The translations under genes were made by a program, and so were the position numbers. From IMG/VR virus record IMGVR_UViG_3300010885_076238, positions 62,001 to 126,000 of that record: DNA of 64,000 nucleotides; one strand, 5' to 3'. The notes under the pieces were generated by a model. That model was given only the letters and a program-made list of their open reading frames with translations, was not told the origin of the DNA and did no database searches. Below, piece by piece: positions 3,317-49,671 of this stretch (positions are counted from its first letter, which is position 1; each line of letters begins with the position of its first letter).

Positions 3317-4591
3317 ATGTTTGAAAAGTTATCTGATCTTGTTCAAGACTTGAAGGCCACTTCATCTTCAAATTCTAAAGTTTCAATTATTAGAGATTAT
3401 TTAAAAGAAGACAAAGACCTTCAAAATATTTTTTATTATGTCTATCATCCCTTTTATCAATTTTATGTTTCAAGTGATAACTGTAAGAAAAATAAAGAAT
3501 TAAAAAATAAGCAGCATGACTGTATTTTTAAATTGTTAGATGATCTTAGAAATAGAAAAATCACTGGTCACGATGCTGTTAGTGCCATTAATGGGTATTT
3601 AGAAAATCATGATCACGTTTCGCTTGTTCATGATATCTTGGACAAAGATTTAAAAATTAGAGCTGCCGATAAATTAATTAATAAAGCAATCCCCGGATTG
3701 ATCCCGGAATTTGAGGTTGCTTTAGCTGAGAAATACACACCGGAAATTATGAATCTCAATGAAGATTGGTATGCGAGTCATAAGCTCGACGGTTGCCGCT
3801 GTGTTTGTGTAGTCGATGATTCTGGTGTGGTGAGCATCTCAAGGCAGGGGAAAATTTTTACAACCTTGGGCTTGGTTGAAGATGCCATTAAAAACTTAAA
3901 CATTAAAAATGTTGTTTTTGACGGAGAGATTTGTCTACTTGATGAAAACGGAAAAGAAAGCTTTCAAGGAATAATGAAGCTTATTCGCAAGAAAGATCAT
4001 GTTATTCAAAACCCTGTTTATAAAATTTTTGATTTGCTAACTACAGGAGAATTTTATAATAAGAAAAGTGAAAGAAAACTATCTGATCGACTTGAATTTC
4101 TCAAGAGTGTTATCAAGGAAGATTCAAATCCTTGTTTGACTGTTTTAGAGCAAATTAAAATTAAAAATAACGAGCATTTTGAAGAGTTAACAAAGAAAGC
4201 AACAGATAGTGGGTGGGAAGGACTAATTCTCAGAAAAGACACAGGATACGCAGGAAAGAGGAGCAAGGATTTATTGAAGTATAAAAACTTCTTTGATGCT
4301 GAGTATGTTGTTGAAGACCTTGAATTCGGCCCGTTCAGATATGTTTTTGAAAACAAGGAAAAAGAAGAGATTATGCTTAGTTGTGCAACAATCAAGCATA
4401 AAGACAATGTCGTGAGAGTGGGCAGCGGCTTTACAATTGATCAAAGAAAGCATTATTACAAAAATCCTCAGGATCTTTTGGGAAAAACAATCAATGTTCA
4501 GTATTTTGAAGAAACCTTCAATCAAGAAGGAGGAATAAGTCTCAGGTTTCCTGTTGTTAAACACATTTATGAAAATGGTAGGGATACATAA
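3317..4591 (+). CDS. lig: ATP-dependent DNA ligase
   Basis: HKLDGCRC (I), FDGEI (III), KIFD (IIIa), WEGLILRK (IV), LLKYK (V), OB-fold VGSGFT and SLRFPV. Confidence 0.95.
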   Translation: MFEKLSDLVQDLKATSSSNSKVSIIRDYLKEDKDLQNIFYYVYHPFYQFYVSSDNCKKNKELKNKQHDCIFKLLDDLRNRKITGHDAVSAINGYLENHDHVSLVHDILDKDLKIRAADKLINKAIPGLIPEFEVALAEKYTPEIMNLNEDWYASHKLDGCRCVCVVDDSGVVSISRQGKIFTTLGLVEDAIKNLNIKNVVFDGEICLLDENGKESFQGIMKLIRKKDHVIQNPVYKIFDLLTTGEFYNKKSERKLSDRLEFLKSVIKEDSNPCLTVLEQIKIKNNEHFEELTKKATDSGWEGLILRKDTGYAGKRSKDLLKYKNFFDAEYVVEDLEFGPFRYVFENKEKEEIMLSCATIKHKDNVVRVGSGFTIDQRKHYYKNPQDLLGKTINVQYFEETFNQEGGISLRFPVVKHIYENGRDT

Positions 4592-6302: not shown

Positions 6303-6938
6303 ATGGTTCGTTTGCCAAAGTACAAAAAAGATGCCGAAGCAGCATACAAATATGCGAAAAAAAATAATATAATTTTTTCTTCAGAGGAAGAAAACGTACT
6401 AACACAAAACCCAGAAGTAGCAATCAAATATGCTTTGAATCTTAAGAAAGAAAGACTATCTGATTTTGTTAACAAAAAGGTTTTTGAATATTATTCTTCA
6501 TTGATCAAGAAAACTCAAAAAAATAAACACTCTTCCGTCTTGCATAATTTTTTTGACTATTTGAAAATGATCAAGGACGTTCCTGATTTTTGTAAAAATG
6601 AAATTTTAGAAAATATTGACCCTGAGCTTTTATATATTTTTGCACAAATTTTAGACAACAAATTAACTGAAAAATACGAAAAAAGAATGTTTCAAAAATG
6701 CCAACAACATAATAATCTTTGGCCTTTGGTAGAATATCAATTTTACTTGAAAACAAAACTACCAGACTATATGCACAATTTTATGATAGCTAAAAATTTA
6801 GAATCGAATTGTAATTCTTCAAAAAATGCCATAGAGGCATATTTTCTAAACCTAAAAGATATTAAAAATATCTTGTTAAAAATTTCTTTGGTATTTGGAA
6901 AAGAAACCAAACTTAAAGAAATTATAGAAGAGCTATGA
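6303..6938 (+). CDS. LP-HN-M family protein (degenerate helical repeats)
   Basis: PKYKKDAEAAYKYA N-motif, KLPDYMHNFMIA, terminal TKLKEIIEEL; promoter motif at 6257-6281. Confidence 0.75.
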   Translation: MVRLPKYKKDAEAAYKYAKKNNIIFSSEEENVLTQNPEVAIKYALNLKKERLSDFVNKKVFEYYSSLIKKTQKNKHSSVLHNFFDYLKMIKDVPDFCKNEILENIDPELLYIFAQILDNKLTEKYEKRMFQKCQQHNNLWPLVEYQFYLKTKLPDYMHNFMIAKNLESNCNSSKNAIEAYFLNLKDIKNILLKISLVFGKETKLKEIIEEL

Positions 6939-7265: not shown

Positions 7266-7454
7266 ATGAAAGTTTTTACTCTTGAAAATGTTGTTGATCG
7301 ACTCGTCAACGCAAAATCCCCGGCCCACAAAGCCCATGCTACTCGCGCACTCAAAACCTATGCTGTAATGAGAGCATTAGAGATTGGATCCACTCCATCC
7401 AGAGTAATCGCTGGGGTTCGTGCGGTTGTTACAAAGCGCAAGCAAATTGCCTAA
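7266..7454 (+). CDS. small basic hypothetical protein
   Basis: AAGGAG RBS; Lys/Arg/Ala-rich 62 aa. Confidence 0.7.
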   Translation: MKVFTLENVVDRLVNAKSPAHKAHATRALKTYAVMRALEIGSTPSRVIAGVRAVVTKRKQIA

Positions 7455-7477: not shown

Positions 7478-8230
7478 ATGCTTATGAAAACAATGTCGGT
7501 ATCTAGACAACCAAAATATTGTGAGTCTCCACATAAGTTTATGGCTAGAGATATAATCCCAAGCCTTTATAGACTTTTTAGTGGAAATGAATCAATTCCT
7601 GAAGGAAAACAATATTTGACTTTAGCCTCCATACAGGACAAAAGTCCTCGTAGCGAAGTTAATCAAATGGTTAATTCCGGCGTGTGTACCCGCAAACAAT
7701 TTGTAGGAATTGATAACAACAAAAAATACATCAAAAGAAATAAAAAAGCCCATCCAGAAGCAACTTTTATTTGTGAAGATTGGAATGTTTTGTTGGCAAC
7801 TAGACAATTCGATCCTGCGATTGTTTATTTGGACTCTACTCATTTCGGTGACAAATTACCAGCACTTAGAACCTTAAAGAATACGTTAGACATTTGCAAA
7901 AATGAAACATTAGTTGTTTGCAATGTTATGGAATCAAACCCCCGATCAGGATTAGGTGAGTTCCTAGATTCTAAAGTCTTACTGGAAAGCCTTCTTTATA
8001 GAGAGATTCCAGCAAAATATAAAGACTGGAACAGGAGCAGAGATTGCAAATCTTGGAGTCAGGAAGAAAACTCAAATATTTATATACCAAGCTACACATA
8101 TCAGACGGCCAAGACCTTAATGAAAAGTTATATTTTTTATAAAGGTTTTATGCCTACAGAAGAAGAAATCGAAAGTTTATTTTCTGAATTTAAAATTTGG
8201 TGTAATGATATTGAGAAAACATTTTGCTAA
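7478..8230 (+). CDS. SAM-dependent methyltransferase-like (Rossmann-fold) protein
   Basis: QFVGID (motif II-like), FICEDW (III-like), IVYLDST (IV-like); motif I is degenerate. Confidence 0.45.
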   Translation: MLMKTMSVSRQPKYCESPHKFMARDIIPSLYRLFSGNESIPEGKQYLTLASIQDKSPRSEVNQMVNSGVCTRKQFVGIDNNKKYIKRNKKAHPEATFICEDWNVLLATRQFDPAIVYLDSTHFGDKLPALRTLKNTLDICKNETLVVCNVMESNPRSGLGEFLDSKVLLESLLYREIPAKYKDWNRSRDCKSWSQEENSNIYIPSYTYQTAKTLMKSYIFYKGFMPTEEEIESLFSEFKIWCNDIEKTFC

Positions 8231-8249
8231 AAGAAAGAAGAAAGACATC

Positions 8250-10502
8250 ATGTTAAAAACCATTGGTAATACTAGCTATAGCTTTTCAGATCCTAAAAGG
8301 AAAGGATTATCTTTCCCGCCTAGAAAGTCTGGAAAAAAGCCTGAACTTTCCACTCCTACATTCTTGAAAAGAATGAAGAAGCCAATAACTGTAAGAGTTT
8401 TTAGGTATTGGCAAGATAAAGCTTTTAATAAATTATTCAATTCAAGGTTTTTCTTGGTGAAAGCATTTTGTGGCAGCGGAAAAACAACTCTTTCTGTTGC
8501 TCTGGCTCTTTATGATGTTATTAAAAATCGTAGGAAGCAAATTTTTATCGTGCCGCAATCGCACATTGGTGATGGCTTTTCAATTAGCGGCAAGTTTTAT
8601 GTTCCAGGTTTAGGAATAGTTAATCTTTGTTCTGCTACAAATTATTGTGAAAATTCACCTAGCAAAGTTCAAATGTTGGCGGATTTCATGACTAGACCTG
8701 CAAGTTTTTCAAATTTCGATCTGGATGAGGAACTTAGGGTTGACGGAACAGAGGGCATGGTCGTTTGTACCCACGCGGCATTCAACGCTGCAATGAAAAA
8801 AGTTATAGCAGATGGAAATTTTGATTTGGCCTGTAAGGACACGGCATTTTATATTGACGAGGCCCATCATGTTAAGGGTGGCGAAACCAAAGAAGATGAC
8901 GAAGAATTTGAAGATTACAATCAATTAGGAAAAGTTTTATATAAAATTATAGCAAGTGCTGAGTCGAACAACTCTAGAGTTGGATTGACAACCGCTACTT
9001 TCTTCAGAGGAGATCAAGGAATCATTGTATCAAGTGACTATTTAGCTAAGTTCGATAGATATGAGCTTGATTTTTTGAGTCATTTTGAAACGCTAGGAAT
9101 TGAGAAGGTATTTATTAATTTTGAAGAATATGAAGATGACCCCATAAATCAAATTGTTGAGAATATTAGAAAAGAAATTCACACCGAGCGTCATTTGCTG
9201 GTTGTTCCTACCATTGTAGGAAAGTGGAGGAAGCATAAAGATCCGAATCTGGAAATTCTTCTTGCTAAAATTAGAAAAATGTTAGTAGAAGAAGGGCTGA
9301 ATCCAGATGAGGCCATTTTGGATTTAGTTCCTGAAAACACGCAAGACAAGAATAAGGCTATTTTACTCAAAGAGCCTAAAGAAAGATATGACGAAGAAAA
9401 TAATTCTAAAATTAGAATTGTAATAACTTGTATGCTTGGCCGCGAAGGAACAGATTGGTGTCCATGTTCTCGCTTGCACAACGCATCAATTGAATTAGGC
9501 TCGCCTACTCTGGCCGTTCAAACTCTGGGCAGATTGTTTAGGGCGTTTGAAGGCAAAGATACTGTGGGAATAACCTACTATATTAAGAAATTCAATAATT
9601 TGAAAAATGCTAGTTCTAAAAGAGAATTTCTAATGGATAGAATCAATGCTATGCTTACTTTGATGATTATTGATGATTTGTTGAACCCGATTATTTTGCC
9701 AGAAATTCCAACTCCTGCCAACAAAAGTAGTCGATCAACTAATTCTTCAAAAAATAAATCAAGCGTAGCAATTAGATTGTCTGATGTTTTTGGCGATAAT
9801 TTTGAAAGTGTGAAAAGGAAAATTTTAGACTCAATATCGATGCAGTCTAATTTTGATGAAAAAACTGTAAATCGCATTATTAATTCTGTAATTGCTGAGT
9901 ATGGTCTTGATAAAGTTGTACAAGTTCAAACTGAAGATGGCATCAAAGAGACTGACATAGACAGTGTTGCTGCTGGTCTTAAACTTTTTCTACTCAGGGC
10001 CAGATCGGAAATACTTAGGTCAAAAAGCATAGACATTAGCGTTATCAGAGAACGCGGCTTTGACAAATTGGTTCAGGAAACCGGTTCAAACGGAAATTTT
10101 TGGTGTGGTGTTTTCGATATGGAAACCCTTATTGAATTTAGGGAATTGATCGGAAAAACTTTTTGGAATAGAGAAGAAAATAACCAGATCAAATCTAATC
10201 TATTGGAAATTCTATCTAAAAATATTGGCAGTGAAATTGATGCGAAAAACAAAAGCCACGAAAGAATTATAAGAAAAAATCTTTTAGACTTTGTGAAATT
10301 TCATGGAGCCTATAATGAGATTTCGGAATCTACTGGGTTGGTAGTTCCGAGTAAAAAAGATGTTGCCGAAAGACTTAGGATTTCAACAACGGAATTAGAT
10401 AAAAAAGTTGATCATTTCAATAAAATAGTTCCGAAAGGATTTGAATTCTTTGAAGAAGGTTCAAAGCTTTCAAATAAGGTAGCAATAGATCACGCAGCGT
10501 GA
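8250..10502 (+). CDS. superfamily 2 (DExH-box, Res-subunit-like) helicase
   Basis: AFCGSGKTT (Walker A), IDEAHH (II), TTAT (III), GREGTDW (V), QTLGRLFR (VI). Confidence 0.88.
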   Translation: MLKTIGNTSYSFSDPKRKGLSFPPRKSGKKPELSTPTFLKRMKKPITVRVFRYWQDKAFNKLFNSRFFLVKAFCGSGKTTLSVALALYDVIKNRRKQIFIVPQSHIGDGFSISGKFYVPGLGIVNLCSATNYCENSPSKVQMLADFMTRPASFSNFDLDEELRVDGTEGMVVCTHAAFNAAMKKVIADGNFDLACKDTAFYIDEAHHVKGGETKEDDEEFEDYNQLGKVLYKIIASAESNNSRVGLTTATFFRGDQGIIVSSDYLAKFDRYELDFLSHFETLGIEKVFINFEEYEDDPINQIVENIRKEIHTERHLLVVPTIVGKWRKHKDPNLEILLAKIRKMLVEEGLNPDEAILDLVPENTQDKNKAILLKEPKERYDEENNSKIRIVITCMLGREGTDWCPCSRLHNASIELGSPTLAVQTLGRLFRAFEGKDTVGITYYIKKFNNLKNASSKREFLMDRINAMLTLMIIDDLLNPIILPEIPTPANKSSRSTNSSKNKSSVAIRLSDVFGDNFESVKRKILDSISMQSNFDEKTVNRIINSVIAEYGLDKVVQVQTEDGIKETDIDSVAAGLKLFLLRARSEILRSKSIDISVIRERGFDKLVQETGSNGNFWCGVFDMETLIEFRELIGKTFWNREENNQIKSNLLEILSKNIGSEIDAKNKSHERIIRKNLLDFVKFHGAYNEISESTGLVVPSKKDVAERLRISTTELDKKVDHFNKIVPKGFEFFEEGSKLSNKVAIDHAA

Positions 10503-10509
10503 GGTCAAA

Positions 10510-11133
10510 ATGATATCTAGCATAAATACAAGCTATGATTCTTTATGCAGATTGTTTGATTTTAGTAACGGCAAAATTTCAAGTAATAAAAAATTATTAC
10601 TTAGTCTTGCAAGAAGAGGGAAGCCTAAGCCAAGTTACAAAACAAGCTTGTATGTTTACTTATGCAGTTGCACAAATAAGAATAATTGTCTTTACGACGA
10701 TGTTTTTAGCGAAAGCATTAGACAAATTAGACCAGACTGGTTTGTAAGAAGACAAGAAACAACAAGGAAGAAAAAAGAAAATCTAATAAAAATTGCAAAA
10801 AAGATGATGCCTAGACCTAATCATTCTGATGCCTCTTATAGAGATCTTTTTTCTTATACTAATAAAAATAGCAATGTTTATGACGAAGATTTTGATTCTA
10901 TTATCAGGAAACTCAGACCAGATTGGTTTTTTACTAGAACTCACTTATCGGAAATAAAGAAACAAAACATACTAAAATTAGCAAAAGAAAGAAAGCCTAA
11001 GCCTAGTAGAAATCATGTTCTTGGAATAGCAATCAAAAATTATACAAACAAAAGCAGCCCAGCCTATGATTCTAACTTTGAAGTTGAGTTAAAAAAACTC
11101 AGACCAGATTGGTTTAAAAATTCGGTAAAATAA
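10510..11133 (+). CDS. three-repeat protein (helicase-associated HA-like units)
   Basis: Three ~60-aa units ending TNKxxxxYDxxFxxxxxxxRPDWF; N-terminal YDSLCRLFDFS. Confidence 0.65.
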   Translation: MISSINTSYDSLCRLFDFSNGKISSNKKLLLSLARRGKPKPSYKTSLYVYLCSCTNKNNCLYDDVFSESIRQIRPDWFVRRQETTRKKKENLIKIAKKMMPRPNHSDASYRDLFSYTNKNSNVYDEDFDSIIRKLRPDWFFTRTHLSEIKKQNILKLAKERKPKPSRNHVLGIAIKNYTNKSSPAYDSNFEVELKKLRPDWFKNSVK

Positions 11134-11153
11134 TTTCTTGATCAATGCGTTAT
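11129..11153 (+). promoter_or_regulatory. phage promoter motif AATAAT-N13-CGTTAT
   Basis: Exact consensus, then AAGGAG and ATG 11173. Confidence 0.7.
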
Positions 11154-11172
11154 AGAAACAAGGAGAAATCCA

Positions 11173-12729
11173 ATGATAAACGATATTAGTTCAAATTACG
11201 AAGCTCTTTGCAAGTTATTTGACTTCACTAAAAAGAGCCGTGCAAGCGGCGTTAAAAAGACTCGCATTATTGTAAAACAAAAACTTTCCTATGAAGATTG
11301 CAAAAAAGAAGTTATTAGTTTGGGAATTGAAGGTGAAAAACAATATAGAAAAAAGAGAAATGAATTAAAAAAACATAATTGGCCTGCTTTGCCGTATGTT
11401 TTTTATAAAGAGTGGATAGATTGGGATAACTTTTGTGGAACTAAAAAAATAGAAATATTAAATTGGAATGATTTCTTATCCAGCTTCAGAGAAGAATGTC
11501 GCAATAATAAAATAAACAGTCGCAATTATCGTGAATTTAGGAAAGAAAATTGGCCTAAAGACCCACGTTCGTATTATCGTGAATGGTCAGGATGGGATTA
11601 TTTATGTGGCGGCGTTGTAGTTGAGCCATATCGTTGCAAAGACATTTCTTTTGAAGATCTAAAAGAAGAAGTAAAGAATTGTAATGTCACTTCTTTCCCA
11701 GAATATAGAAAATGCTATAAAAATCACAATTGGCCTGCTTCTCCTCGTTCTATGTACGAGAACGAATGGGTTTCTTTCAATCATTTTTTCGGAAAAGAAA
11801 AGAAATTTTTGTCTTATGAAGATTTAGTAGTAGAAGTTAGAAAAGCTGAGATCAGTAGTATGACTCAGTATCACGAATACAGAATAAAAAATAATAAAAA
11901 ATCATGGAACTCTACTCCTCATAAATTTGCAGAGTGGACTAATAATTTTGATTTCTTCGGAAAAGATAAAGATCATTGGGCTAAAAAAGGTATTTCTTCT
12001 TATAAAGATGCAAAGACTCTTGAGCAGCTTGTCAAGGAGATTAGAGACAATGGGGTAAAAACCAGAAAAGAGTATAGGAAAAATTGTAAAAAATTAGGAT
12101 GGCCTGCTAATCCCGATGATGCCTACAAGGATTGTTGGAAGGGATGGGATTTCCTATTTAGCAGGGAAGAAAAAGTTGAATTGTCTTGGAACGAATTTGT
12201 CGCACAAGTTAGAGACGCAAAAATCAAGGGATTTTGGGACTATAGAAATAGATATAAAAACTATAAAGGCTGGGTCTCTCATCCTATGAAAAAATACGCT
12301 GAAGATTGGACAACTTGGATGGACTTGCTTGGCGAGCATTTTTCTAAAAAAAACTCAGAAAACGAACATAAAAACAAAATTTCTTGGGAAGAACTCAAGA
12401 GACAAGTTAGAGCCGTAGAAATAGAAACGCAACTAGAATACAGAACGAGATATAAAGAGTATGGATGGACTTCAAGCCCAGAAAAAAGCTATCCAGATAA
12501 CTGGAATGGCTGGGATGATTTTATTGGAAAAAGACAAATTACTTTTTCTCAACTGAAAGAAGAAGTCAAATTAAATAATATAAAAGGACAGGTAGAATAT
12601 AGAAAAAGACACAAAGAATTTGATGGCTGGCCTTCTGCTCCTGAACGTGTTTTTGAAAATGAATGGAAAGATTGGTTTGACTTTTTGAGCAAGCCAAGAG
12701 ATAAGTATCACCAAGAGGCTCAAAGATGA
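11173..12729 (+). CDS. 'integrase-repeat'-type tandem repeat protein (no integrase domain)
   Basis: About 9 units of ExxxxVxxxxIxSxxEY...WPxxPxxxYxxxWxGWxxF; N-terminal YEALCKLFDFT. Confidence 0.75.
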   Translation: MINDISSNYEALCKLFDFTKKSRASGVKKTRIIVKQKLSYEDCKKEVISLGIEGEKQYRKKRNELKKHNWPALPYVFYKEWIDWDNFCGTKKIEILNWNDFLSSFREECRNNKINSRNYREFRKENWPKDPRSYYREWSGWDYLCGGVVVEPYRCKDISFEDLKEEVKNCNVTSFPEYRKCYKNHNWPASPRSMYENEWVSFNHFFGKEKKFLSYEDLVVEVRKAEISSMTQYHEYRIKNNKKSWNSTPHKFAEWTNNFDFFGKDKDHWAKKGISSYKDAKTLEQLVKEIRDNGVKTRKEYRKNCKKLGWPANPDDAYKDCWKGWDFLFSREEKVELSWNEFVAQVRDAKIKGFWDYRNRYKNYKGWVSHPMKKYAEDWTTWMDLLGEHFSKKNSENEHKNKISWEELKRQVRAVEIETQLEYRTRYKEYGWTSSPEKSYPDNWNGWDDFIGKRQITFSQLKEEVKLNNIKGQVEYRKRHKEFDGWPSAPERVFENEWKDWFDFLSKPRDKYHQEAQR

Positions 12730-13796
12730 TAAACAATATTAGTTCAAATTATAAAGCTCTTTGCGAACTGTTTAATTTCAGCAAAAAAAGCTATAGTCGC
12801 CCGAAGAGCCGAAGACTCCGCGTAGTGGAATTTTTATTATTTGAAGAATGCAAAAAAGAAGTTAGACAACAAGGGATAAAAAGTTCGACTGAATACAAAA
12901 AGCTCTATGCTAAAAGAAGCTGGCCGTCTGATCCTACGAAATACTATAAAGAACAATGGAAAGGTTGGCATGACTTTTTGGATAAAGAATGTTTGATTTC
13001 TTTTGAAGAACTTAAAAAAGAGGTTGCTTTAAAAGACATCCAGTCTTCTAGTCAATATCAAAAAACTTTCAAAAGTAACAAATGGCCTCGTCAACCATTT
13101 GTTACTTTTGAAAAAGATTGGAAAGGCTGGGATGATTTTTTTGGTAGAGCCAAAAAACTTTCATACGAAGAAATTAAAAAACAATTGAGATTAAAGGGTG
13201 TTATTTCTATGCCCCAATACAAAAAAGTATATAAAAATAATGGATGGCCCTCCAATCCAAACTCGTTTTATAAAAAAGAATGGAAAGGTTGTTATGATTT
13301 TTTCAATACGAAGAAGCCAAAATTTATTTCGTTTGCACAACTAAAAAAAATATTAAAATTTGAGCATGTTGATTCTTGGATTAAGTATAATAAAATATAT
13401 AAAAAAAGAAATTGGCCATCATCTCCGCGAGATTCTTATAAAAGAGAATGGAAAGGAGGGCATGACTTTTTTGGAAATACAGAGCCGACAAAGTTTCCTT
13501 CTTTCGAAGAAATAAAAAAAGAAATGAAAAAAGAAAAAATTAAATTTTGGAGTCAATATAAAAAACTATACAAAGAAAAGGGCTGGCCTTCTAGGCCACA
13601 AGATTATTACAAAGAGTGGAAAAATTGGCGTGGAAAAAAATTTCCTTCTTTTAACGAGTTTAAAGAAAAAATAAAAATAGAGGGCATTGAAATTTTTTCG
13701 AATCAATATAAAAAATTATACAAAAAAAGAGGATGGCCTTCTAACCCAAATAAATTTTATGAAAAAGAGTGGAAGAAAGGTTTGTTTAAAAAATGA
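12726..13796 (+). CDS. 'integrase-repeat'-type tandem repeat protein
   Basis: Six units with WPSxPxxxYKxxWKG; N-terminal YKALCELFNFS; ATGA overlap with previous gene. Confidence 0.75.
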   Translation: MINNISSNYKALCELFNFSKKSYSRPKSRRLRVVEFLLFEECKKEVRQQGIKSSTEYKKLYAKRSWPSDPTKYYKEQWKGWHDFLDKECLISFEELKKEVALKDIQSSSQYQKTFKSNKWPRQPFVTFEKDWKGWDDFFGRAKKLSYEEIKKQLRLKGVISMPQYKKVYKNNGWPSNPNSFYKKEWKGCYDFFNTKKPKFISFAQLKKILKFEHVDSWIKYNKIYKKRNWPSSPRDSYKREWKGGHDFFGNTEPTKFPSFEEIKKEMKKEKIKFWSQYKKLYKEKGWPSRPQDYYKEWKNWRGKKFPSFNEFKEKIKIEGIEIFSNQYKKLYKKRGWPSNPNKFYEKEWKKGLFKK

Positions 13797-13838
13797 ACTC
13801 GTCTTTACCAATAAATTAACTTGACCTACAATGATAGC

Positions 13839-14438
13839 ATGAACATAAAGAACGAACAGTTTTTGAAGCTAATCGATCAATACCCAGATGTTGCTTTTAG
13901 CTATTGTTCAGTAGCAAACAGATTCGCAGATAAAATTAATAAAAAAATATTTGATTCTGCTGAGTCGGTTTTGTTGCGTGATCCAAAGTATTGCTATAGG
14001 TACGCAGACGAAGTTATAAGAGGAAGATGGAAAAAAGCAGAAAACACTTTGTCTAAAGATATCGATTTTGCTTATAATTATGCTAAAAATATCTTAAAAA
14101 AAAGATTTTTATTGGCTGAAAATTTAATTTCTCAAGACCCTGAATATTCTTTATATTATGCTGAATTTGTTGTTAAAAAAAGATGGATGAAGGGCGAACA
14201 AGCAATATCAAGTAACCCAGCTTTCGCATATAAATATGCAGAATTTATAAAAAAAAGATTCTACAAAGGAGAAGAAGCAATAGGAGATAGTCCTGAATAT
14301 TCGTTTTATTATGCACAAAATATTATTCACGGAAAGTTGCCAGTAAAAATGCACTCAAAAATGATTGCGTATGCTTTGGATAATCCAAAAAATGAATTTA
14401 TTAATAAGTATTTTCAATTAATAAAATCTTCTGCTTGA
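13839..14438 (+). CDS. 26-aa helical-repeat protein, LP-HN-M family
   Basis: YAxxVIxGRWxxAE units; GKLPVKMHSKMIAYA. Confidence 0.8.
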   Translation: MNIKNEQFLKLIDQYPDVAFSYCSVANRFADKINKKIFDSAESVLLRDPKYCYRYADEVIRGRWKKAENTLSKDIDFAYNYAKNILKKRFLLAENLISQDPEYSLYYAEFVVKKRWMKGEQAISSNPAFAYKYAEFIKKRFYKGEEAIGDSPEYSFYYAQNIIHGKLPVKMHSKMIAYALDNPKNEFINKYFQLIKSSA

Positions 14439-14480: not shown

Positions 14481-15206
14481 ATGAGAAGAAATATGAACGA
14501 AATCAAAAAAACAATCAACACAGCAAAAATTATCGTCATCGCAGAAGAATTAAAAAGAAATAATAAGGACATTTCTATCTACGCAATCAAAGAAATTGCC
14601 AAGCAAAAAAATATAGAAATGGAAATGAATTATGCTACTATTACAAAAACTCTAAAAGAGAAAGGGTACGAATTTGTAAAAGTTTTTGATAAAAATAAGT
14701 TTTCTCAAAGAAGAATTGAAATGGCCCAGCTAACCAGATTGGGCTGGACTTTGCAAATGATTGCTGATAAATATGGAATAACGAGACAAGGCGTTTCTTT
14801 ATTGCTTAAGAAAGCAGCTTTGGATGACAATCAAGTTGTTGTAAAAAGCAGGACAGTTAAGAGTAACCTTGTTGAAAAGAATGTTGTTTTTGTTAAGAGA
14901 AGCAAAAAAGAATCTTGCATTTGTCAAACTTGTGGAAAACAGTTTTTTTCAAAAAACAAGAAAAGGAAAAACTGTAGCAAGGTGTGTTTGAAAAAGTCAA
15001 TCGAAAAAAGAACTGGCGGCGAGTGGAGTCGAATTGAAAAAGTTGATTTAGTTTGCAGTTTTTGTAGCAAACCTTTTCAAAGATCAAAGTATTTGCATAA
15101 AATTGTAACGCGATCAAAAGGCAACTCAGACAAAAATTATTGTAGCAGAGAATGTTACCACAGTAAAAATCGAACCGTCCCAGTGCAGGGAGTTTTGGTT
15201 TCTTGA
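14481..15206 (+). CDS. HTH + zinc-finger DNA-binding protein
   Basis: TLQMIADKYGITRQGVSLLL helix-turn-helix; CxxC...CSKVC and CxxC...CSREC. Confidence 0.7.
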   Translation: MRRNMNEIKKTINTAKIIVIAEELKRNNKDISIYAIKEIAKQKNIEMEMNYATITKTLKEKGYEFVKVFDKNKFSQRRIEMAQLTRLGWTLQMIADKYGITRQGVSLLLKKAALDDNQVVVKSRTVKSNLVEKNVVFVKRSKKESCICQTCGKQFFSKNKKRKNCSKVCLKKSIEKRTGGEWSRIEKVDLVCSFCSKPFQRSKYLHKIVTRSKGNSDKNYCSRECYHSKNRTVPVQGVLVS

Positions 15207-17098: not shown

Positions 17099-17524
17099 AT
17101 GGAAATCGAACCACCAGACCCCTCTATCATGCTCAATAGTTTTCTTTGCATTCAAAAAGAAATTTTCGTAAATATTTGTGCTCATTTTAGCAAAAATGTT
17201 TGCACCAGTAATCAGGGAGTTTACAAGAGAGCTTTAGACTTCAGCACCGACTTCAATAATTGTGAGCCGTTTGATTTTCAAAGCTTGATGATCAGTGACG
17301 AAAATTTCCCTTTGTTTTGCAATTTTATGTTCGATTTCATAAACTACATTAGGAAGATTGACCAAAACCTCTATAATGAGAGTCTTGGATTCGCCAGAGA
17401 ACAAATGAAATTTCCCTCCATGCCTACTCTGGACATGGCTATTGTAGGTTGTGGAAATTCCATTACTATGTTCTTGGACATGAGAGAAAATGGGCTTTTG
17501 CCAAAAAAAGAGGATTTTGAATGA
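17099..17524 (+). CDS. hypothetical protein
   Basis: AAAGGA RBS; variant promoter AATAAT-N13-CGTTGT at 17038-17062. Confidence 0.7.
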   Translation: MEIEPPDPSIMLNSFLCIQKEIFVNICAHFSKNVCTSNQGVYKRALDFSTDFNNCEPFDFQSLMISDENFPLFCNFMFDFINYIRKIDQNLYNESLGFAREQMKFPSMPTLDMAIVGCGNSITMFLDMRENGLLPKKEDFE

Positions 17525-18084
17525 TGGAAAATAGAGTTGAGAAATACAAATTAAACGCAAAAAAAGCCTTTGAGTTTGCCGGGGGTTTTAGAGAAGTAAT
17601 TCCCGGTAGAGACAGAACCAGAAGAATTTATGGGAAAAAAGCTGGAAGGCCAGAATATACCAAGAAGATAGAGCTTAATTCAGAGGAGCAACTTGTTTTA
17701 TTGTTGGACTTAGAATACGCCTATCGTTATTCTGTAAAATTAATGGGCAAGAGACTTGCCGAAGAGGTTGAGGAAAAGTTTTTATCTCAAGCTGAAACTG
17801 TATTGGATGTTAAATACGCCATAGAATATTGCAATCGTTTTGAAATTGCTCTTCCTTCTTGTTTGCACAACAGAATATTAATGCACTCAGCTGTGCCAGT
17901 TGATAAAAAAGGAATGGCTTGGAGAGAAAGATATCAAATTGAAAGATCAGAAAGAAGGCAAAAAAAATATTTAGTTAAATTTCAAGAACAAAGAAAATCT
18001 TTCAAGATTATTTTAGAGGGAATAATTAAAGAAAATAATCTACATGAAAGCAATACTATAAAAGATTTACTTGATTCGATTTAG
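17521..18084 (+). CDS. LP-HN-M family protein
   Basis: KYKLNAKKAFEFA, ALPSCLHNRIL, terminal TIKDLLDSI. Confidence 0.75.
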   Translation: MMENRVEKYKLNAKKAFEFAGGFREVIPGRDRTRRIYGKKAGRPEYTKKIELNSEEQLVLLLDLEYAYRYSVKLMGKRLAEEVEEKFLSQAETVLDVKYAIEYCNRFEIALPSCLHNRILMHSAVPVDKKGMAWRERYQIERSERRQKKYLVKFQEQRKSFKIILEGIIKENNLHESNTIKDLLDSI

Positions 18085-28328: not shown

Positions 28329-28372
28329 AAATAAAAATTTATTCAAGCCGTTATGTGTATAAGGAGACAAAA

Positions 28373-29497
28373 ATGAACGAACAATTTGCCAATGTCATTC
28401 GCCAAAGAATTTACCAGCGTGTTCCTCTTGAGCAACTCGCAGAAGCAGGAATTAAGGAATTTTATGTTGCTGGCAATTCTTTGAATAAACAGCCCCCTAA
28501 CGATATTGATATTTTCCCAGTGGGAAATCTCTTTACTCAAGAGCAAGCTGAAAAGCTTGGAAATATCGTTAGTTCAACTAAAAACGCAATCACTGTTAAG
28601 GTTGGTCTTGATAAAAAAATCAACCATCAAACCGTAGATGGTCAGAATGAAATTGAAGTTAGTGGCAAAAACATTGTGGTTCAACTTTGTAATTACCAAC
28701 ACGGTGAACTTGAGTCTTTAGTTAATTCTTTTGATTTTTCTCATATCCAAATTGGAGCCAAGGTAGACAATCTTGGCATCACAGTCTATTACACTAAGGA
28801 ATATGAGAATGCAAAAATGTGTCAATCTACCGAATATGTCGGTAGCGAATACCCTTTGTCTTCTATGATTAGAATGTTCAAATACGCAAAGCGTGGCGAC
28901 TTTGCTGGAAATTCTCATATTTTTTCTGCTTTCAAAATCGTCACAGATGTTGTAGACAGAGGGTTTGATGACTTCGATGACTTCAAGAATCAATTGGATG
29001 CTATTGATCTTGGATTGGTTCCAGAAAATCAAAAGGAACTTGTTGATGCAGGCTTGGCATCAGAAGAATCCGGCTTGGATTTTTCTGAAGAAGGCAAAAA
29101 AGTTCTTAATAAACTGATGAGCTTTTTGATTTTGAGCAAGAAGGCGATTTGCAAAGACGCACAGGCTGCGTATGATTACGCACAAAGCTCTGGCGAACGA
29201 TTTGAAAAGGGCGAAGATGCGATTAGCAAAGATGAAAAATTGGCTCTTGCATATGCAAAAAATATATTGAAAGGTAGGTTTGAAAAAGGCGAAGAAGCCA
29301 TTTCTAACAATCCTTATTTGGTTCATGATTATTGGTGCAATGTGATTAACAAATCAATTCATGTATATGATGTATATAATAATAGCGATATGCAAAAACT
29401 GCCTGAATTTTTGCATAATAAAATGATCGCTTATGGGATGGATAATAATCATTATGCAAAAGACTATCTTTTTAGAATTTCAAAAATCGCAGCGTAA
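28373..29497 (+). CDS. Pol-beta-superfamily nucleotidyltransferase fused to helical repeats and LP-HN-M motif
   Basis: VAGNS...NDIDIF, SFDF, SMIRMFKYAKRG; C-terminal AYDYA...RFEKGE units and KLPEFLHNKMIA; promoter at 28330-28354. Confidence 0.7.
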   Translation: MNEQFANVIRQRIYQRVPLEQLAEAGIKEFYVAGNSLNKQPPNDIDIFPVGNLFTQEQAEKLGNIVSSTKNAITVKVGLDKKINHQTVDGQNEIEVSGKNIVVQLCNYQHGELESLVNSFDFSHIQIGAKVDNLGITVYYTKEYENAKMCQSTEYVGSEYPLSSMIRMFKYAKRGDFAGNSHIFSAFKIVTDVVDRGFDDFDDFKNQLDAIDLGLVPENQKELVDAGLASEESGLDFSEEGKKVLNKLMSFLILSKKAICKDAQAAYDYAQSSGERFEKGEDAISKDEKLALAYAKNILKGRFEKGEEAISNNPYLVHDYWCNVINKSIHVYDVYNNSDMQKLPEFLHNKMIAYGMDNNHYAKDYLFRISKIAA

Positions 29498-42869: not shown

Positions 42870-43415
42870 ATGAGCGAAAACGGAAGCCAAAAATACTTTG
42901 ATTTTCTTCACAAGTTAGAAAACGACGCTTCTTTTTGTTATAGTTATCTCGGAAATTGCCAAAGGGGTAGCGAAACATGGAACCAATGCTTGCAGACTAT
43001 TGCTAAAGACGCAAGCATTTCCTATACTTGGGCTGCCGCACTAAAATCAAGATTTGAACTTGGTGAACTTGCTATTTCAAAAGTGCCTCAATACTCTATT
43101 CCATATGCAAAAGATATTATAAAGGGCAGGTTCGTATTGGCAGAGCCAAAAATTTTAGAATCTTCTGCCGACTCTTTTAGGTACGCATCGACCGTAATAC
43201 ATGGAAGATGGTTAGAAGCAGAGCCAATAATTGCAAAAGATCCAAATCATTCTTTTCTTTATGCAAGAGATATAATCAAAGGAAGATTTGAACTTGGAGA
43301 AGAAACCATTGCTCACGATGAAGATGCTGCTTTTAGATACGCAACCGATATAATCAAGGGCAAGTTGCCAGAAAAAATGCACAATATTATGATTGCAAAA
43401 GGAGTGGCGGCATGA
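42870..43415 (+). CDS. 26-aa helical-repeat protein, LP-HN-M family
   Basis: Units plus KGKLPEKMHNIMIA; ATG 42870 with AAGGAG; variant promoter at 42826-42850. Confidence 0.85.
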   Translation: MSENGSQKYFDFLHKLENDASFCYSYLGNCQRGSETWNQCLQTIAKDASISYTWAAALKSRFELGELAISKVPQYSIPYAKDIIKGRFVLAEPKILESSADSFRYASTVIHGRWLEAEPIIAKDPNHSFLYARDIIKGRFELGEETIAHDEDAAFRYATDIIKGKLPEKMHNIMIAKGVAA

Positions 43416-45432: not shown

Positions 45433-46521
45433 ATGCCTAATACAATTACGCCAATCGAAGCAGCAAGCCTTTACTTCAAAGAAGGCTCAAGTGATAAAGT
45501 TTACAATGCTACCTTGGAAAAAGAGGATGACAACAAATATGTTGTTAATTTCTCTTACGGCAGACGAGGAAGTGCATTGAAGTCTGGATCCAAAACCTCA
45601 AGCCCCGTTTCTCTTAAGGAAGCCAAGACCATCTTTGACAAAATTGTCAGAGAGAAAACTTCTAAGGGCTATAAATACGTCACCGACGCTGTTGCTAAAG
45701 AAATTCATGTTGCCGACAACCCACCGGACACGCCTACTGAGTCCAAGTGCGTTTTGCTCAATCCAATCAGCGAAGAAGAACTTGAAAAGTATTTGAACGA
45801 TCCAGATTGGATTGCCCAACAGAAAATTGATGGAGTTAGATTTATGCTCCATAAGGTAAAAGATAAAATTACTGCGTATAACCGTCGCGGACTTTACGCA
45901 AACATTCCAACCGATCTTTATAATTTCGCAAAAAACACTCAAGAAGATTTTCTAGTTGATGGAGAATTGATTGGAGATGTTTTTCACACCTTCGATATTC
46001 TTGAATATAACGGCAAAGACCTTACTCAAAACTCAGTTGTCGAAAGGCTTGAGGTTTTGTTGAATTGGGTTAATAATAATCCGTGCGAACTTGTAAAGTA
46101 TACAGAAACTCAAAGTTCAAGCAAAATTGAATTTTATGATCGTCTTGTTCGTGAAAACCAAGAAGGAATTGTTTTCAAACATAAAGACGCAAAGTATTAT
46201 GCTGGTAGGCCCGCCAGCGGTGGAAAGTATGTAAAATATAAGTTTTACAGCACTTGTAGTTGTGTCGTGACTGATGTGAATAATAAAAGAAGCGTAAGTA
46301 TAGGCTTGCTCAATGGCAAAAAATTAGTTGATGCTGGGAATGTTACTATTCCTATCAATTTTGAAATTCCTAATAAGGATGACATTGTGGAAGTCAGATA
46401 CCTTTATGCAAGAAAGCAGTCTGGCTCTCTTTATCAGCCTGTGTATCTTGGCAAAAGAACCGATATTGTTAGAGAAGATTGCAAGCAAAGTCAACTGAAG
46501 TATAAATTTGATGATGAATAA
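45433..46521 (+). CDS. WGR-domain + ATP-dependent DNA ligase
   Basis: WGR: SSDKVY...YGRRG...EKTSKGY; ligase: QKIDG, DGEL, FDIL, EGIVFK, KYKF; OB fold VEVRY, LYQPVY. Confidence 0.85.
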   Translation: MPNTITPIEAASLYFKEGSSDKVYNATLEKEDDNKYVVNFSYGRRGSALKSGSKTSSPVSLKEAKTIFDKIVREKTSKGYKYVTDAVAKEIHVADNPPDTPTESKCVLLNPISEEELEKYLNDPDWIAQQKIDGVRFMLHKVKDKITAYNRRGLYANIPTDLYNFAKNTQEDFLVDGELIGDVFHTFDILEYNGKDLTQNSVVERLEVLLNWVNNNPCELVKYTETQSSSKIEFYDRLVRENQEGIVFKHKDAKYYAGRPASGGKYVKYKFYSTCSCVVTDVNNKRSVSIGLLNGKKLVDAGNVTIPINFEIPNKDDIVEVRYLYARKQSGSLYQPVYLGKRTDIVREDCKQSQLKYKFDDE

Positions 46522-47535: not shown

Positions 47536-48074
47536 TAAAAAATCATGGCTACCAATCCATCATGGCTACCAATCCTATAGATTTCAAAAAAGCAACGCTT
47601 AATTATGGCAAGGAAGCCATAGAAGGTGTTCTAGTAATTGCGAATGATCCAGCAATAACTAAACTAGATAAAAAGTCAAGCGTTAAGATTCCTAAAAAAA
47701 TATTCGTGCCTGTAAAGGAGTCTGTTTTTTACACGAATAGTCCTGCTCATATGAATGAAGTTCTTGAAAGATGCAAACAAAGCGATATGTTAGAATTGCT
47801 TAGTTATTTAGACTTATCCGTACCTTTTATAGATGATTATTTCTTTGACGGCGACTCAGGATTTATAGTTAATTTTTATCAGCCAGATCAAGGAGATTGT
47901 CTGGCAGATCAGCGTTATCATAAATGTCCAGTTTGTATTCAATTGCTTGACCCAATCGAATGGCTAAACAATTGGGATATGAGCGACGATGATAAAAATA
48001 AATGGATCGTCGCCATGATAAACCAAAACCTACCAGAAAATATTAAAAATAAACTGCTTTTGATAGGCCTTTAA
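47532..48074 (+). CDS. hypothetical protein with terminal LP-xN motif
   Basis: C-terminus NLPENIKNKLLL. Confidence 0.65.
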   Translation: MIKNHGYQSIMATNPIDFKKATLNYGKEAIEGVLVIANDPAITKLDKKSSVKIPKKIFVPVKESVFYTNSPAHMNEVLERCKQSDMLELLSYLDLSVPFIDDYFFDGDSGFIVNFYQPDQGDCLADQRYHKCPVCIQLLDPIEWLNNWDMSDDDKNKWIVAMINQNLPENIKNKLLLIGL

Positions 48075-48120
48075 TATTAATTATTAAAACGCGTTATCAA
48101 GTATCAAGCAAGGACAACAA

Positions 48121-49137
48121 ATGAATAGCTACCACAAGCAATATAGAGAATTTGTCAAAGAACTCAACCCAACCGATGCAGAAGTTAATAATTTTTTGTG
48201 GGGACATAAAGCAGATTTCTCTCAACATAAGAAATTAGGAATAATTAAAAAAATTCTCACCAGTCCAAAATGGTGTTACGAATACGCAAAACTTATAAAT
48301 AAAGATAGATGGGAAAAGGGCGAAAAAACCATACTGACTGATGCCCAACATTCACACCTTTACGCAAGAGATATAATCAAAGGTAGATGGATCGAAGCAG
48401 AAGAAATTATCAAAACAGAATCCTCAATTGCGTATGATTATGCAGCAAACATAATCAAAGGCAGATGGATCGAAGCAGAAGAAATTATCAAAGAGGATTC
48501 ATATAGAACATATTTTTACGCAGCAAACATAATCAAAGGCAGATGGATCGAAGGCGAAGAAATTATCAAAACAGCCGGTGACGCTGACGCTGCTTATCAT
48601 TATGCAAAAGATATAATTAAAGGTAGATGGATAGAAGCAGAAGATTTTATTAAAACAAATCCAGGTTGTGCTTTTGGTTACGCAAATGATGTTATCAAAG
48701 GTAGATGGATCGAAGCAGAAGATTTTATTAAAACAAATCCATGCTATGCTTATGAGTATGCAAAAGATGTGATCAAAGGCAGATGGATCGAAGCAGAAGA
48801 TTTTATTAAAACAGATCCATACTATGCTTATTATTACGCAAGAGATGTCATCAAAGGTAGATGGATCGAAGGCGAAGAAATTATTAAAACAGATCCACGC
48901 CATGCTTATGATTATGCAAAAGATGTGATCGAAGGCAGATGGATCGAAGGTGAAGATATTATTAAAACAGATCTGCGTTATTCATGGGATTATGTTCGAA
49001 ATTTAGTAAAAGAAAGATGGGAAAATGGAGAAGGAATCTTCGCATCTGATCCACAATATTTGTATAGATATGCCACGGAAATTCTAATAGACGAACTACC
49101 CCCCGAATTAGAAGCAGCATACGCTTTACATGAATAA
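48121..49137 (+). CDS. 26-aa helical-repeat protein with near-identical units
   Basis: [I/V]I[K/E]GRWIE[A/G]E x8 plus degenerate flanks; promoter at 48073-48097. Confidence 0.9.
   Translation: MNSYHKQYREFVKELNPTDAEVNNFLWGHKADFSQHKKLGIIKKILTSPKWCYEYAKLINKDRWEKGEKTILTDAQHSHLYARDIIKGRWIEAEEIIKTESSIAYDYAANIIKGRWIEAEEIIKEDSYRTYFYAANIIKGRWIEGEEIIKTAGDADAAYHYAKDIIKGRWIEAEDFIKTNPGCAFGYANDVIKGRWIEAEDFIKTNPCYAYEYAKDVIKGRWIEAEDFIKTDPYYAYYYARDVIKGRWIEGEEIIKTDPRHAYDYAKDVIEGRWIEGEDIIKTDLRYSWDYVRNLVKERWENGEGIFASDPQYLYRYATEILIDELPPELEAAYALHE
48373..49002 (+). repeat. 78-bp coding tandem repeat, 8 copies (one of 84 bp)
   Basis: Near-constant core ATCAAAGGYAGATGGATCGAAG...ATYAAAAC with variable codons between copies. 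Confidence 0.9.
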
Positions 49138-49146
49138 GGAAATAAA

Positions 49147-49671
49147 ATGAAAATTATTAAGAAGATAGAAAAAAAATCAGAATACAGTGACAGGTTAGTA
49201 GCCACTACAATTTTATTTAAAAATGAACACGGAATTTTTCAACTAGACGATAGTAAAAATATTTTGCACAAGTGGAATGATAACGAAGGTTGGGTTTACG
49301 TTACCAACGAAACGACAGGCATTAATGACGCAAAAAATTTAATAGAAGAAATGTTTACGCCAGAAACGATCCTGCCTAAAGAAATTGAAGAGCCTCAAAA
49401 ATTTCTTATAAGTAACGATTCGATTTTATCCGACGAAGAAGTGATGATAGTAGTAAACATTGTGAAAAAAGCAGTGAATGAATGGAGACTGTTTCCCGGC
49501 ATGAACGAAGAAAAAAAAGAATGTTTACAAGAATTGGAGTATCTTAGATATTGTAATGATAACGAACTCACAGCCTTCTTTAAACACTCTGGCAAAATCT
49601 TTCTTAGTAGTCTGCCAGAAATGATTAAAAATAAACTAATCTGCAAAATGGCTTTCAAAGAAGCTGCCTAG
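49147..49671 (+). CDS. hypothetical protein with terminal LP-xN motif
   Basis: SLPEMIKNKLIC near the C-terminus. Confidence 0.7.
   Translation: MKIIKKIEKKSEYSDRLVATTILFKNEHGIFQLDDSKNILHKWNDNEGWVYVTNETTGINDAKNLIEEMFTPETILPKEIEEPQKFLISNDSILSDEEVMIVVNIVKKAVNEWRLFPGMNEEKKECLQELEYLRYCNDNELTAFFKHSGKIFLSSLPEMIKNKLICKMAFKEAA

What the first reader, a model, noticed from the sequence alone, without database searches (positions are those of the whole stretch)
7478..13796. Methyltransferase-like + SF2 helicase + three repeat proteins with a shared N-terminal peptide
Seen: a Rossmann/MTase-like ORF (7478) overlaps a 750-aa DExH helicase (8250). Three genes follow whose first 19 aa are homologous (MISSINTSYDSLCRLFDFS / MINDISSNYEALCKLFDFT / MINNISSNYKALCELFNFS), but their bodies are two different repeat types: HA-like YDxxF...RPDWF x3, and integrase-repeat-like WPxxP...WxGWxxF x~9 and x6. 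A separate promoter at 11129 drives the last two. Known: HA and integrase-type repeats are small putative nucleic-acid-binding units often fused to the C-termini of helicases. Inference: here they are split off as interchangeable specificity subunits that dock on the helicase through the conserved peptide. This would be a modular DNA-targeting machine, restriction-like against host or competitor DNA, that I do not recognise as a named system.
Basis: partly seen in the sequence, partly recalled or inferred. Interest (0 to 1): 0.8.

Follow-up and report, generated by a model that had tools for sequence, protein, structure and literature searches.

The report
Phage helicase with detachable DNA-binding adaptors
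A large freshwater phage encodes a methyltransferase-fold protein and an SF2 helicase, followed by three repeat proteins that share a 19-residue N-terminal tag; related phages carry the same repeats fused to the helicase, so the tag most likely re-attaches interchangeable DNA-binding arms to one motor.

Summary

Comparative data support the docking idea:
- Homologous helicases exist with RPDWF or HNH_repeat arrays fused to their C-terminus.
- Six related phage loci keep the same order (methyltransferase-fold gene, where the contig reaches it, helicase, three tagged repeat genes).
- The tag changes together with the helicase tail.
- In other lineages the helicase ends inside a small helical domain, and each partner starts with the missing piece.

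Not supported: a promoter at 11129, a sequence-level 'HA' label for the first repeat type, and a restriction-like role. There is no nuclease and no defence-family match, and the module is a conserved viral core pair.

Best reading: a phage DNA-translocase holoenzyme with exchangeable targeting arms. Binding itself is untested and the biological role is unknown. This is a new variant of a known kind, helicases carrying small DNA-binding repeats.

The parts
7266..7454 (+). Small 62-aa basic helical ORF that always precedes the methyltransferase-fold gene in the close clade. Membership in the module is uncertain.
   Evidence: Homologues sit at the same position in L003, L004, L007 and L009. No Pfam or PHROG family matched.
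7478..8230 (+). orf250: a class I (Rossmann) methyltransferase-fold protein without the GxGxG loop. It is the conserved partner of the helicase.
8250..10502 (+). SF2 DEAH/ResIII helicase or translocase. The first in-frame ATG is at 8205, but 8250 is the likelier start.
   Evidence: Pfam ResIII 2.1e-7. 144 homologues, many on contigs of 150-640 kb. AF2 pLDDT 83 with the core at residues 62-493. Foldseek neighbours are generic SF2: Pol theta helicase, Snf2 remodelers, Lhr, XPB. No PDB sequence hit.
10050..10499 (+). Lineage-specific C-terminal tail of the helicase (residues 616-765). It is a confident helical domain followed by a conserved but unstructured last 25 residues (nt 10425-10499) ending in -AA. 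This is the proposed socket for the partner peptide.
   Evidence: Confident tail helices at 656-739; the last 25 residues have no regular structure. The tail HMM is found only in the clade whose partners carry the peptide. The last 25 residues are the most conserved part of the tail, 0.67 against 0.49-0.57. The fused homologues go straight into their repeat arrays after the helicase region, with no such tail; two of them were checked with the tail HMM and matched only its first ~50 positions.
10510..11133 (+). g3: partner 1. Peptide tag at nt 10510-10566, then 3 RPDWF units at residues 23-78, 84-140 and 147-202.
   Evidence: It has its own GAGG ribosome-binding site 7-10 nt upstream.
11173..12729 (+). 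g4: partner 2. Peptide tag at nt 11173-11229, then 8 INT_rpt-type units.
   Evidence: AAGGAG ribosome-binding site upstream.
12726..13796 (+). g5: partner 3. Peptide tag at nt 12726-12782, then 6 INT_rpt units. Its start overlaps the g4 stop (ATGA).

Best explanation
This is a conserved phage module built around one SF2 ATP-driven DNA translocase or helicase.

The motor works with a class I methyltransferase-fold protein. The two are adjacent here and fused in some relatives.

In many relatives the motor carries a C-terminal array of small helical nucleic-acid-binding repeats. In this phage lineage the array has been cut off and multiplied into three stand-alone adaptor proteins, one with 3 RPDWF units and two with 8 and 6 INT_rpt units.

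Each adaptor begins with the same 19-residue amphipathic peptide, M-I-[SN]-x-I-x-[ST]-[NS]-Y-x-x-[IL]-C-x-L-F-[ND]-F. I infer that this peptide plugs into the helicase's lineage-specific C-terminal tail, most likely into its conserved but unstructured last 25 residues. One motor can then be loaded with alternative DNA-binding arms.

What is shown: the folds, the fused and split forms, the conserved gene order, and the joint change of tag and tail.

What is inferred: physical docking, DNA binding by the arrays, and the role. I take the role to be phage DNA metabolism (recombination, replication or transcription-coupled remodelling) rather than restriction.
For: 1. Fusions. Homologous helicases P0043, P0049, P0052 and P0115 continue directly into 4-11 RPDWF units. 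P0098 continues into 8 HNH_repeat units (1.8e-63). P0054 continues into an HA-like domain plus a further repeat type. An Atlas cluster of viral helicases carries INT_rpt.

2. orf250 is fused N-terminally to the helicase in P0234, P0236 and P0242. It is adjacent to the helicase in 12 distinct loci.

3. Six related phage loci (L003, L004, L043, L044, L045, L047; helicase identity 67% down to 31%) each keep the helicase followed by three tagged partners. orf250 sits upstream wherever the contig reaches that far.

4. The tag is 61% identical over residues 1-19, against 14% over residues 20-59, across 15 partners. It sits on two repeat families with no detectable homology. It is unique in the genome and is conserved as protein, not as DNA.

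5. Tag and tail change together. At 37% helicase identity the tail is still homologous, and all three partners carry the same diverged tag, MLSE[TV]KNNY..VF.HF. At 31% identity the tail end differs, and all three partners carry a different 33-residue tag.

6. In lineages without the tail, the helicase stops inside a small domain and each partner starts with the missing part. The L012 partner's residues 3-36 match HA profile positions 31-64 (E 1.2e-6, above the cut-off). Partner N-termini align to helices 2-3 of the HA-like domain of fused proteins (z 6-9). The L021 helicase ends after helix 1 of a repeat unit that its three partners continue. The cultured phage Tunturi_5 shows the same in gp100, gp99 and gp98.

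7. The last 25 residues of the helicase are the best-conserved part of the tail yet are unstructured in the model.

8. The HA domain is reported to bind DNA (Mills et al. 2013, PMC3637686, as cited in PMC12191111).
Against: - No direct test of binding was possible.
- For this lineage (type A), neither the tail nor the peptide could be shown to be pieces of one known domain. The RPDWF HMM finds nothing in the tail.
- Word-based searches for the tail and for the peptide returned only close relatives, so sampling of this lineage is limited to seven loci.
- DNA binding by RPDWF and INT_rpt units is assumed from their context, not shown.
- The methyltransferase-fold protein lacks the canonical SAM loop, so its activity is uncertain.
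- The biological role is a guess from gene neighbours: ligases, RNA ligase, N6 methyltransferase.
Confidence: 0.6

Rival explanations
1. The shared peptide binds a different common partner, not the helicase. Candidates are the methyltransferase-fold protein, a sliding clamp, RNA polymerase or a ClpX-type unfoldase. The gene linkage to the helicase would then reflect a shared pathway only.
For: The motif ..LC.LFDF loosely resembles hydrophobic clamp- or partner-binding peptides (my own knowledge). The phage encodes a ClpX-like ORF, and many of its proteins end in -AA. orf250 is as tightly linked to the locus as the helicase is.
Against: The Gln of the beta-clamp motif QL[SD]LF is absent. The fused forms join the arrays to the helicase itself. 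In sister lineages the partner N-terminus completes a domain left truncated at the helicase C-terminus. The tag changes when the helicase tail changes.
Confidence: 0.15
2. The peptide is only an intramolecular N-terminal cap or folding element of the repeat solenoids, inherited through tandem duplication, with no docking role.
For: Repeat arrays often need capping helices (general knowledge). The three genes are neighbours, and g4 and g5 share 82% DNA identity over their first 66 nt.
Against: The same peptide precedes two repeat families with no detectable homology. It also precedes a hybrid protein with both repeat types, L003 12226. The fused helicase-array proteins run from the helicase region straight into the first repeat unit, with no such peptide. 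The RPDWF units start at residue 23 as complete units.
Confidence: 0.12
3. The peptide is a virion-packaging signal, like the capsid-targeting sequence of the T4 internal proteins. The repeat proteins would then be injected with the DNA.
For: There are several neighbouring genes with a common short N-terminus and highly variable bodies, as at the T4 internal-protein locus (my own knowledge). DNA-binding bodies would suit packaged proteins.
Against: No conserved Glu or other cleavage site follows the tag; positions 10, 14, 17 and 19-22 vary. The genes lie among DNA-metabolism genes. The fused and split relationship to the helicase, and the complementary fragments in sister lineages, point to the helicase as the partner.
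Confidence: 0.05
4. One reading: a restriction-like machine that attacks host or competitor DNA.
For: The helicase matches the ResIII profile and is paired with a methyltransferase fold, an arrangement reminiscent of Type III Mod/Res.
Against: No nuclease domain was found in any of the five proteins or in the fused homologues. There is no PADLOC defence family beyond a trivial Walker-A match to Cas3. The methyltransferase fold lacks the SAM loop and has no target-recognition domain. The pair is a widely conserved single-copy module of large viral contigs.
Confidence: 0.08

Closest known systems
Helicases with C-terminal HA (PF03457), HNH_repeat (PF18780) or INT_rpt (PF14882) arrays
   Same: An SF2 ResIII/DEAH core followed by arrays of roughly 50-60-residue helical units. 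Direct homologues of the window helicase carry such arrays in one chain.
   Different: Here the arrays are separate genes, three per phage. Each starts with a conserved docking tag, and the helicase has a dedicated tail in place of the array.
Snf2-type remodelers with a C-terminal SANT/SLIDE DNA-binding domain (Chd1, ISWI)
   Same: An SF2 translocase core plus helical DNA-binding modules that anchor the motor. Chd1, SNF2h, ISW1 and INO80 are among the top structural neighbours of the core.
   Different: TM by query is only about 0.33, and no Snf2-specific insertions were demonstrated. There is no sequence relation of the repeats to SANT/SLIDE. Membership is not claimed.
Type I and Type III restriction-modification enzymes (motor plus methyltransferase plus exchangeable specificity subunit)
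   Same: A ResIII-type motor, a methyltransferase-fold partner, and separate interchangeable DNA-recognition subunits, as a design logic.
   Different: No nuclease, no target-recognition domain, a non-canonical SAM site and no defence-family match. The context is a conserved viral core, not a defence island.
Phage P1 DarB-like methyltransferase-helicase proteins
   Same: A methyltransferase fold N-terminal to an SF2 helicase in a phage protein, as in the fused P0234 and P0236. The comparison rests on my own knowledge of DarB.
   Different: No sequence relation was tested or found. DarB is a virion-packaged anti-restriction protein with a canonical N6-adenine methyltransferase.
Jumbo-phage-specific Snf2/Swi2 SF2 helicases proposed to replace UvsW or act like RapA (Iyer et al. 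2021, PMC7824862)
   Same: Lineage-specific SF2 helicases of large phages, placed in recombination or transcription by context.
   Different: My term search of that survey (SWI2, helicase-associated, DarB and similar terms) turned up no mention of split repeat adaptors or a methyltransferase-fold partner. No membership test was run.

Membership tests
Class I SAM-dependent methyltransferase (orf250) | Seven-stranded Rossmann-like sheet with a terminal beta-hairpin | tested here: met
Class I SAM-dependent methyltransferase (orf250) | Glycine-rich motif I (GxGxG) after strand 1 | tested here: not met
   The loop after strand 1 (45-49) reads A-S-I-Q-D-K-S-P-R-S-E. The family consensus is TLCxxQxxxxxSEIxQ, with no glycines.
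Class I SAM-dependent methyltransferase (orf250) | Acidic residue at the end of strand 2, and a motif IV residue on strand 4 | tested here: met
   D79 is nearly invariant at the end of strand 75-79. D119 is invariant on strand 113-123. There is no (D/N)PP(Y/F) motif.
Class I SAM-dependent methyltransferase (orf250) | SAM binding and methyl transfer | not testable with these tools
   Needs ITC or DSF with SAM/SAH and an activity assay.
SF2 helicase (ResIII/DEAH type) | Walker A, DExH, motif III and motif VI, in two RecA-like lobes | tested here: met
   GSGKT, DEAHH, TAT and QxxGRxxR are conserved; G90, G92, K93, D218, E219, H221, Q439, R443 and R446 are invariant. Pfam ResIII. The two lobes are modelled and match SF2 structures.
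Snf2 family | Snf2-specific helical insertions and a profile match | tested here: inconclusive
   Snf2 remodelers are among the top Foldseek hits, but TMq is about 0.33 and Pol theta, Lhr and XPB score alike. There is no Pfam SNF2 hit.
INT_rpt (PF14882) | Profile score above the gathering cut-off | tested here: met
   g5 scores 29.4 bits against 26.5. g4 scores 26.0 bits, just under. My own unit HMM finds 6 and 8 units.
HA domain (PF03457), for g3 | Profile match to HA | tested here: not met
   No Pfam hit for g3 at E up to 0.1, nor for longer RPDWF arrays at E up to 1. hhalign against HA-like pieces gave probability below 1%. Only a structure-level lead exists: TM 0.60 to HA-array helicases.
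Type III / Type I restriction-modification | Endonuclease domain on the motor, and a methyltransferase with a target-recognition domain | tested here: not met
   No nuclease or TRD family was found in any component. PADLOC gave only a Walker-A match to Cas3.
T4-type capsid-targeting sequence | Short shared N-terminus ending at a conserved prohead-protease site (Glu) | tested here: not met
   No conserved Glu lies in or after the tag in 15 sequences. The definition rests on my own knowledge of T4.
Beta-clamp-binding motif QL[SD]LF | Conserved Gln followed by L-x-L-F | tested here: not met
   The tag has [IL]-C-x-L-F with no Gln at any position.

The most novel reading that the evidence does not exclude
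Large-phage SF2 translocases form a 'plug-and-socket' family. Their C-terminal DNA-binding arrays have been severed at least five separate times, each time inside or next to a small helical domain. This produced sets of two to five interchangeable adaptor proteins. The adaptors re-attach by fragment complementation (HA-type splits) or through a dedicated peptide and tail pair, as in this phage. A single motor can thus be re-targeted during infection. Its conserved -AA end may also tie it to ClpX-type turnover.
Probability: 0.45. Interest if true: 0.75.

Novelty: new variant of a known kind. Interest (0 to 1): 0.62.

Why it matters
The module would explain a conserved, unannotated gene set found in many large environmental phage genomes: several hundred protein clusters, on contigs of up to 640 kb.

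It would also be a natural example of a motor enzyme that swaps targeting subunits through a short tag or a split domain. That is useful as a model of gene fission and as a possible engineering scaffold.

A cultured relative, Tunturiibacter phage Tunturi_5 (gp100, gp99, gp98), makes the idea directly testable.

Tried and rejected
- I first guessed that the type A helicase tail is made of degenerate RPDWF units and that the peptide is half of such a unit. My RPDWF HMM finds nothing in the tail or the peptide, so I rejected this.
- RPDWF and INT units as distant homologues: rejected by hhalign.
- RPDWF as a sequence-level HA relative: no support.
- A nucleotide search and a single-protein scan of phage collections found almost nothing, only Tunturi_5.
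- An alignment scan of viral contigs gave one locus.
- A degenerate DNA pattern for the peptide gave one chance-like hit in viral contigs.
- Region-restricted protein searches for the tail and for the peptide returned only near relatives and were poor value.
- A Pfam scan did not detect the first half of HA at the helicase C-termini.
- A PDB sequence search with the helicase profile found nothing.
- Only DNA runs hold the locus, so no transcript evidence was obtained.
- A literature search found no description of the split arrangement.
Full report
**Source**

The window is bases 62001-126000 of a single 204,311-bp contig. The contig has 34.7% G+C, 14 tRNA genes and a tmRNA. IMG/VR holds it as a linear virus record estimated 88% complete. 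Around the finding lie a T4 Rnl1-like RNA ligase, an ATP-dependent DNA ligase and an N6/N4 methyltransferase. Most other large ORFs match no PHROG family. This is a little-known lineage of large phages.

**Check of the observation**

The three N-termini read MISSINTSYDSLCRLFDFS, MINDISSNYEALCKLFDFT and MINNISSNYKALCELFNFS. A six-frame motif scan of the whole genome finds the motif only on these three genes.

Aligned as DNA, similarity begins exactly at the ATG and the upstream regions are unrelated. In g3 versus g4, 6 of the 10 identical residues use different codons. Selection therefore acts on the peptide, not on a DNA or RNA element. Each gene has its own Shine-Dalgarno-like sequence.

- g3 contains three complete 58-residue units ending in RPDWF, at residues 23-78, 84-140 and 147-202.
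- g4 has eight INT-type units and g5 has six.
- g5 passes the Pfam INT_rpt cut-off. g4 misses it by half a bit.

The RPDWF unit belongs to no Pfam family and does not match HA-like profiles. The only link to HA is an ESM Atlas structure match of g3 to the HA arrays of giant-virus helicases (TM 0.60), plus feature scores of about 0.8. That is a lead only.

The consensus scan finds no promoter-like site at 11129. A strain about 98% identical, from another study, has lost 11 of the 39 spacer bases between g3 and g4 while keeping the gene order.

The helicase probably starts at 8250, as its homologues do. That removes the overlap with the upstream ORF.

**The two enzymes**

The helicase has all SF2 motifs and a ResIII match. 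It has no relative of solved structure by sequence. Its model (pLDDT 83) has a disordered basic N-terminus, a two-lobe core and a helical C-terminal region. Structural neighbours are generic SF2 enzymes, with many Snf2 remodelers among them.

**The enzymes are a unit**

The orf250 homologue lies immediately upstream of the helicase in 12 distinct loci, spanning helicase identities from 67% down to about 27%. The two are one polypeptide in P0234, P0236 and P0242. Tunturi_5 lacks an obvious orf250 homologue at that position, so the pairing is frequent but not universal.

**The repeats belong to the helicase**

Among 144 helicase homologues, several continue in one chain into repeat arrays:
- P0043, P0049, P0052 and P0115 continue into 4-11 RPDWF units.
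- P0098 continues into eight HNH_repeat units (E 1.8e-63).
- P0054 continues into an HA-like domain followed by a further repeat type.

An Atlas cluster of viral helicases carries INT_rpt.

**The split form and its tag**

Six related loci keep the order helicase, then three partner genes:
- L003 (67% helicase identity)
- L004, L043 and L044 (about 50%)
- L047 (37%)
- L045 (31%)

orf250 sits upstream in all of them except L047, whose contig begins at the helicase.

In the four closest loci plus the window, all 15 partners begin with M-I-[SN]-x-I-x-[ST]-[NS]-Y-x-x-[IL]-C-x-L-F-[ND]-F. I2, Y9, F16 and F18 are invariant. Identity is 61% over residues 1-19 against 14% over the next 40. The hydrophobic positions 2, 5, 9, 12, 13 and 16 fall on one face of a helix, which is my inference from their spacing.

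The bodies vary freely. They are RPDWF arrays, INT arrays, or both in one protein (L003 12226). The two unit types show no homology. The fused proteins run from the helicase region straight into the first repeat unit, with no such tag. The tag is therefore an independent module specific to the split state.

**Tag and tail change together**

A profile of the last 150 residues of the close helicases finds the tail only in that clade and in a 33-38% identical group. The fused forms do not carry it: they pass straight from the helicase region into their arrays, and the two that were checked, P0052 and P0115, match only the first ~50 profile positions.

In L047 the tail is homologous and still ends ..PKGYEFF...SRLSNK....AA. 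All three of its partners carry the same diverged tag, MLSE[TV]KNNY[KR][NS]VF[EK]HF.

In L045 the tail end is different. All three of its partners share an unrelated 33-residue N-terminus, MIEIKVPEWFLKTKEI....

Within the close clade, the last 25 residues are the most conserved stretch of the tail, yet the model leaves them without regular structure. That is the signature of a binding motif.

**Sister lineages show the same principle more plainly**

- In L024, L015 and L006 the helicase ends ...LY.F.LRQRR.... Two or three partners begin M.KS.(E/K)K.LY.IPGWE.F. Together these align across the junction to the HA-like domain of fused P0054.
- In L012, L025 and Tunturi_5 the helicase ends after the first helix. 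The partners begin with the other two. Residues 3-36 of an L012 partner match HA profile positions 31-64 above the Pfam cut-off. Alignments to the fused proteins give z of 6-9.
- In L021 the helicase ends after the first helix of another repeat unit, and three partners continue it.
- L018 has a further variant.

So the array was separated from the motor several times at different points. Each time, the partners kept the piece that complements the motor's end. HA is a small helical domain reported to bind DNA (Mills et al. 2013, cited in PMC12191111).

**What it does**

I found no nuclease and no defence-system relative. A scan of one genome per prokaryotic species recovered only a viral-looking MAG contig identical to L012.

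The neighbours are nucleic-acid ligases and a DNA methyltransferase. A published survey proposes that lineage-specific SF2 helicases of jumbo phages stand in for UvsW in recombination, or act like RapA with RNA polymerase (PMC7824862).

I therefore favour a DNA-metabolism translocase with exchangeable DNA-binding arms over a restriction-like weapon. This step is inference.

**Limits**

- No multimer prediction was available, and no RNA data hold the locus.
- The type A lineage is sampled by seven loci.
- Two region-restricted protein searches added little.

Noticed in passing
window 13067-13113: A perfect 19-bp inverted repeat with a 9-nt loop lies inside the second INT unit of g5. It encodes ..FKSNKWPRQPFVTFEK... 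It is far longer than chance would give and its purpose is unknown.
   Followed up: partly
G000 whole genome; window 8205-10502, 28373-29497, 42870-43415, 49147-49671: Nine of 230 ORFs of at least 100 aa end in Ala-Ala. This ties it for the commonest C-terminal dipeptide in a 35% G+C genome. The nine include the helicase and a ClpX-like ORF at G000 47868-49130. The phage tmRNA tag also ends in AA, and helicase homologues down to 31% identity end in -AA. This may be a ClpX-type degron class.
   Followed up: partly
window 6303-6938, 13821-14438, 17521-18084, 28355-29497, 48121-49137: A family of paralogous proteins is built from 'DPxY.YRYA....G.W..(A/G)E' repeats (phrog_28193). It is scattered through the window and is also present next to the module in L045, L004 and L011.
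   Followed up: no
window 14481-15206: A 241-aa protein has an N-terminal HTH (weak HTH_23 and sigma-70 region 4 matches) and a Cys-rich C-terminal half that matches an HNH-endonuclease PHROG (1.8e-5). It is conserved at the same position in L045.
   Followed up: no
L020 7057-7485, L025 9039-9269, L026 13832-14011: Small basic proteins made of 'A(A)KKAWETRR' repeats lie next to the helicase module in distant loci. The window has a different small basic ORF (7266-7454) in the equivalent place.
   Followed up: no
window 11116, 11145, 12995: A strain about 98% identical, from a 2022 study, differs by a 1-nt deletion near the g3 stop, an 11-nt deletion in the g3-g4 spacer and a 9-nt in-frame insertion in g5. 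The one listed change inside a tag (10545 A>G) is synonymous.
   Followed up: partly
L043 5695-6957 and 13772-14062; L044 12915-13616: Relatives carry ClpX, ClpP and an RNA polymerase alpha-CTD-like gene within a few kb of the helicase module.
   Followed up: no
window 3317-4591 and 45433-46521: There are two ATP-dependent DNA-ligase-like genes in one window, plus a T4 Rnl1-like RNA ligase at 236-1204.
   Followed up: no
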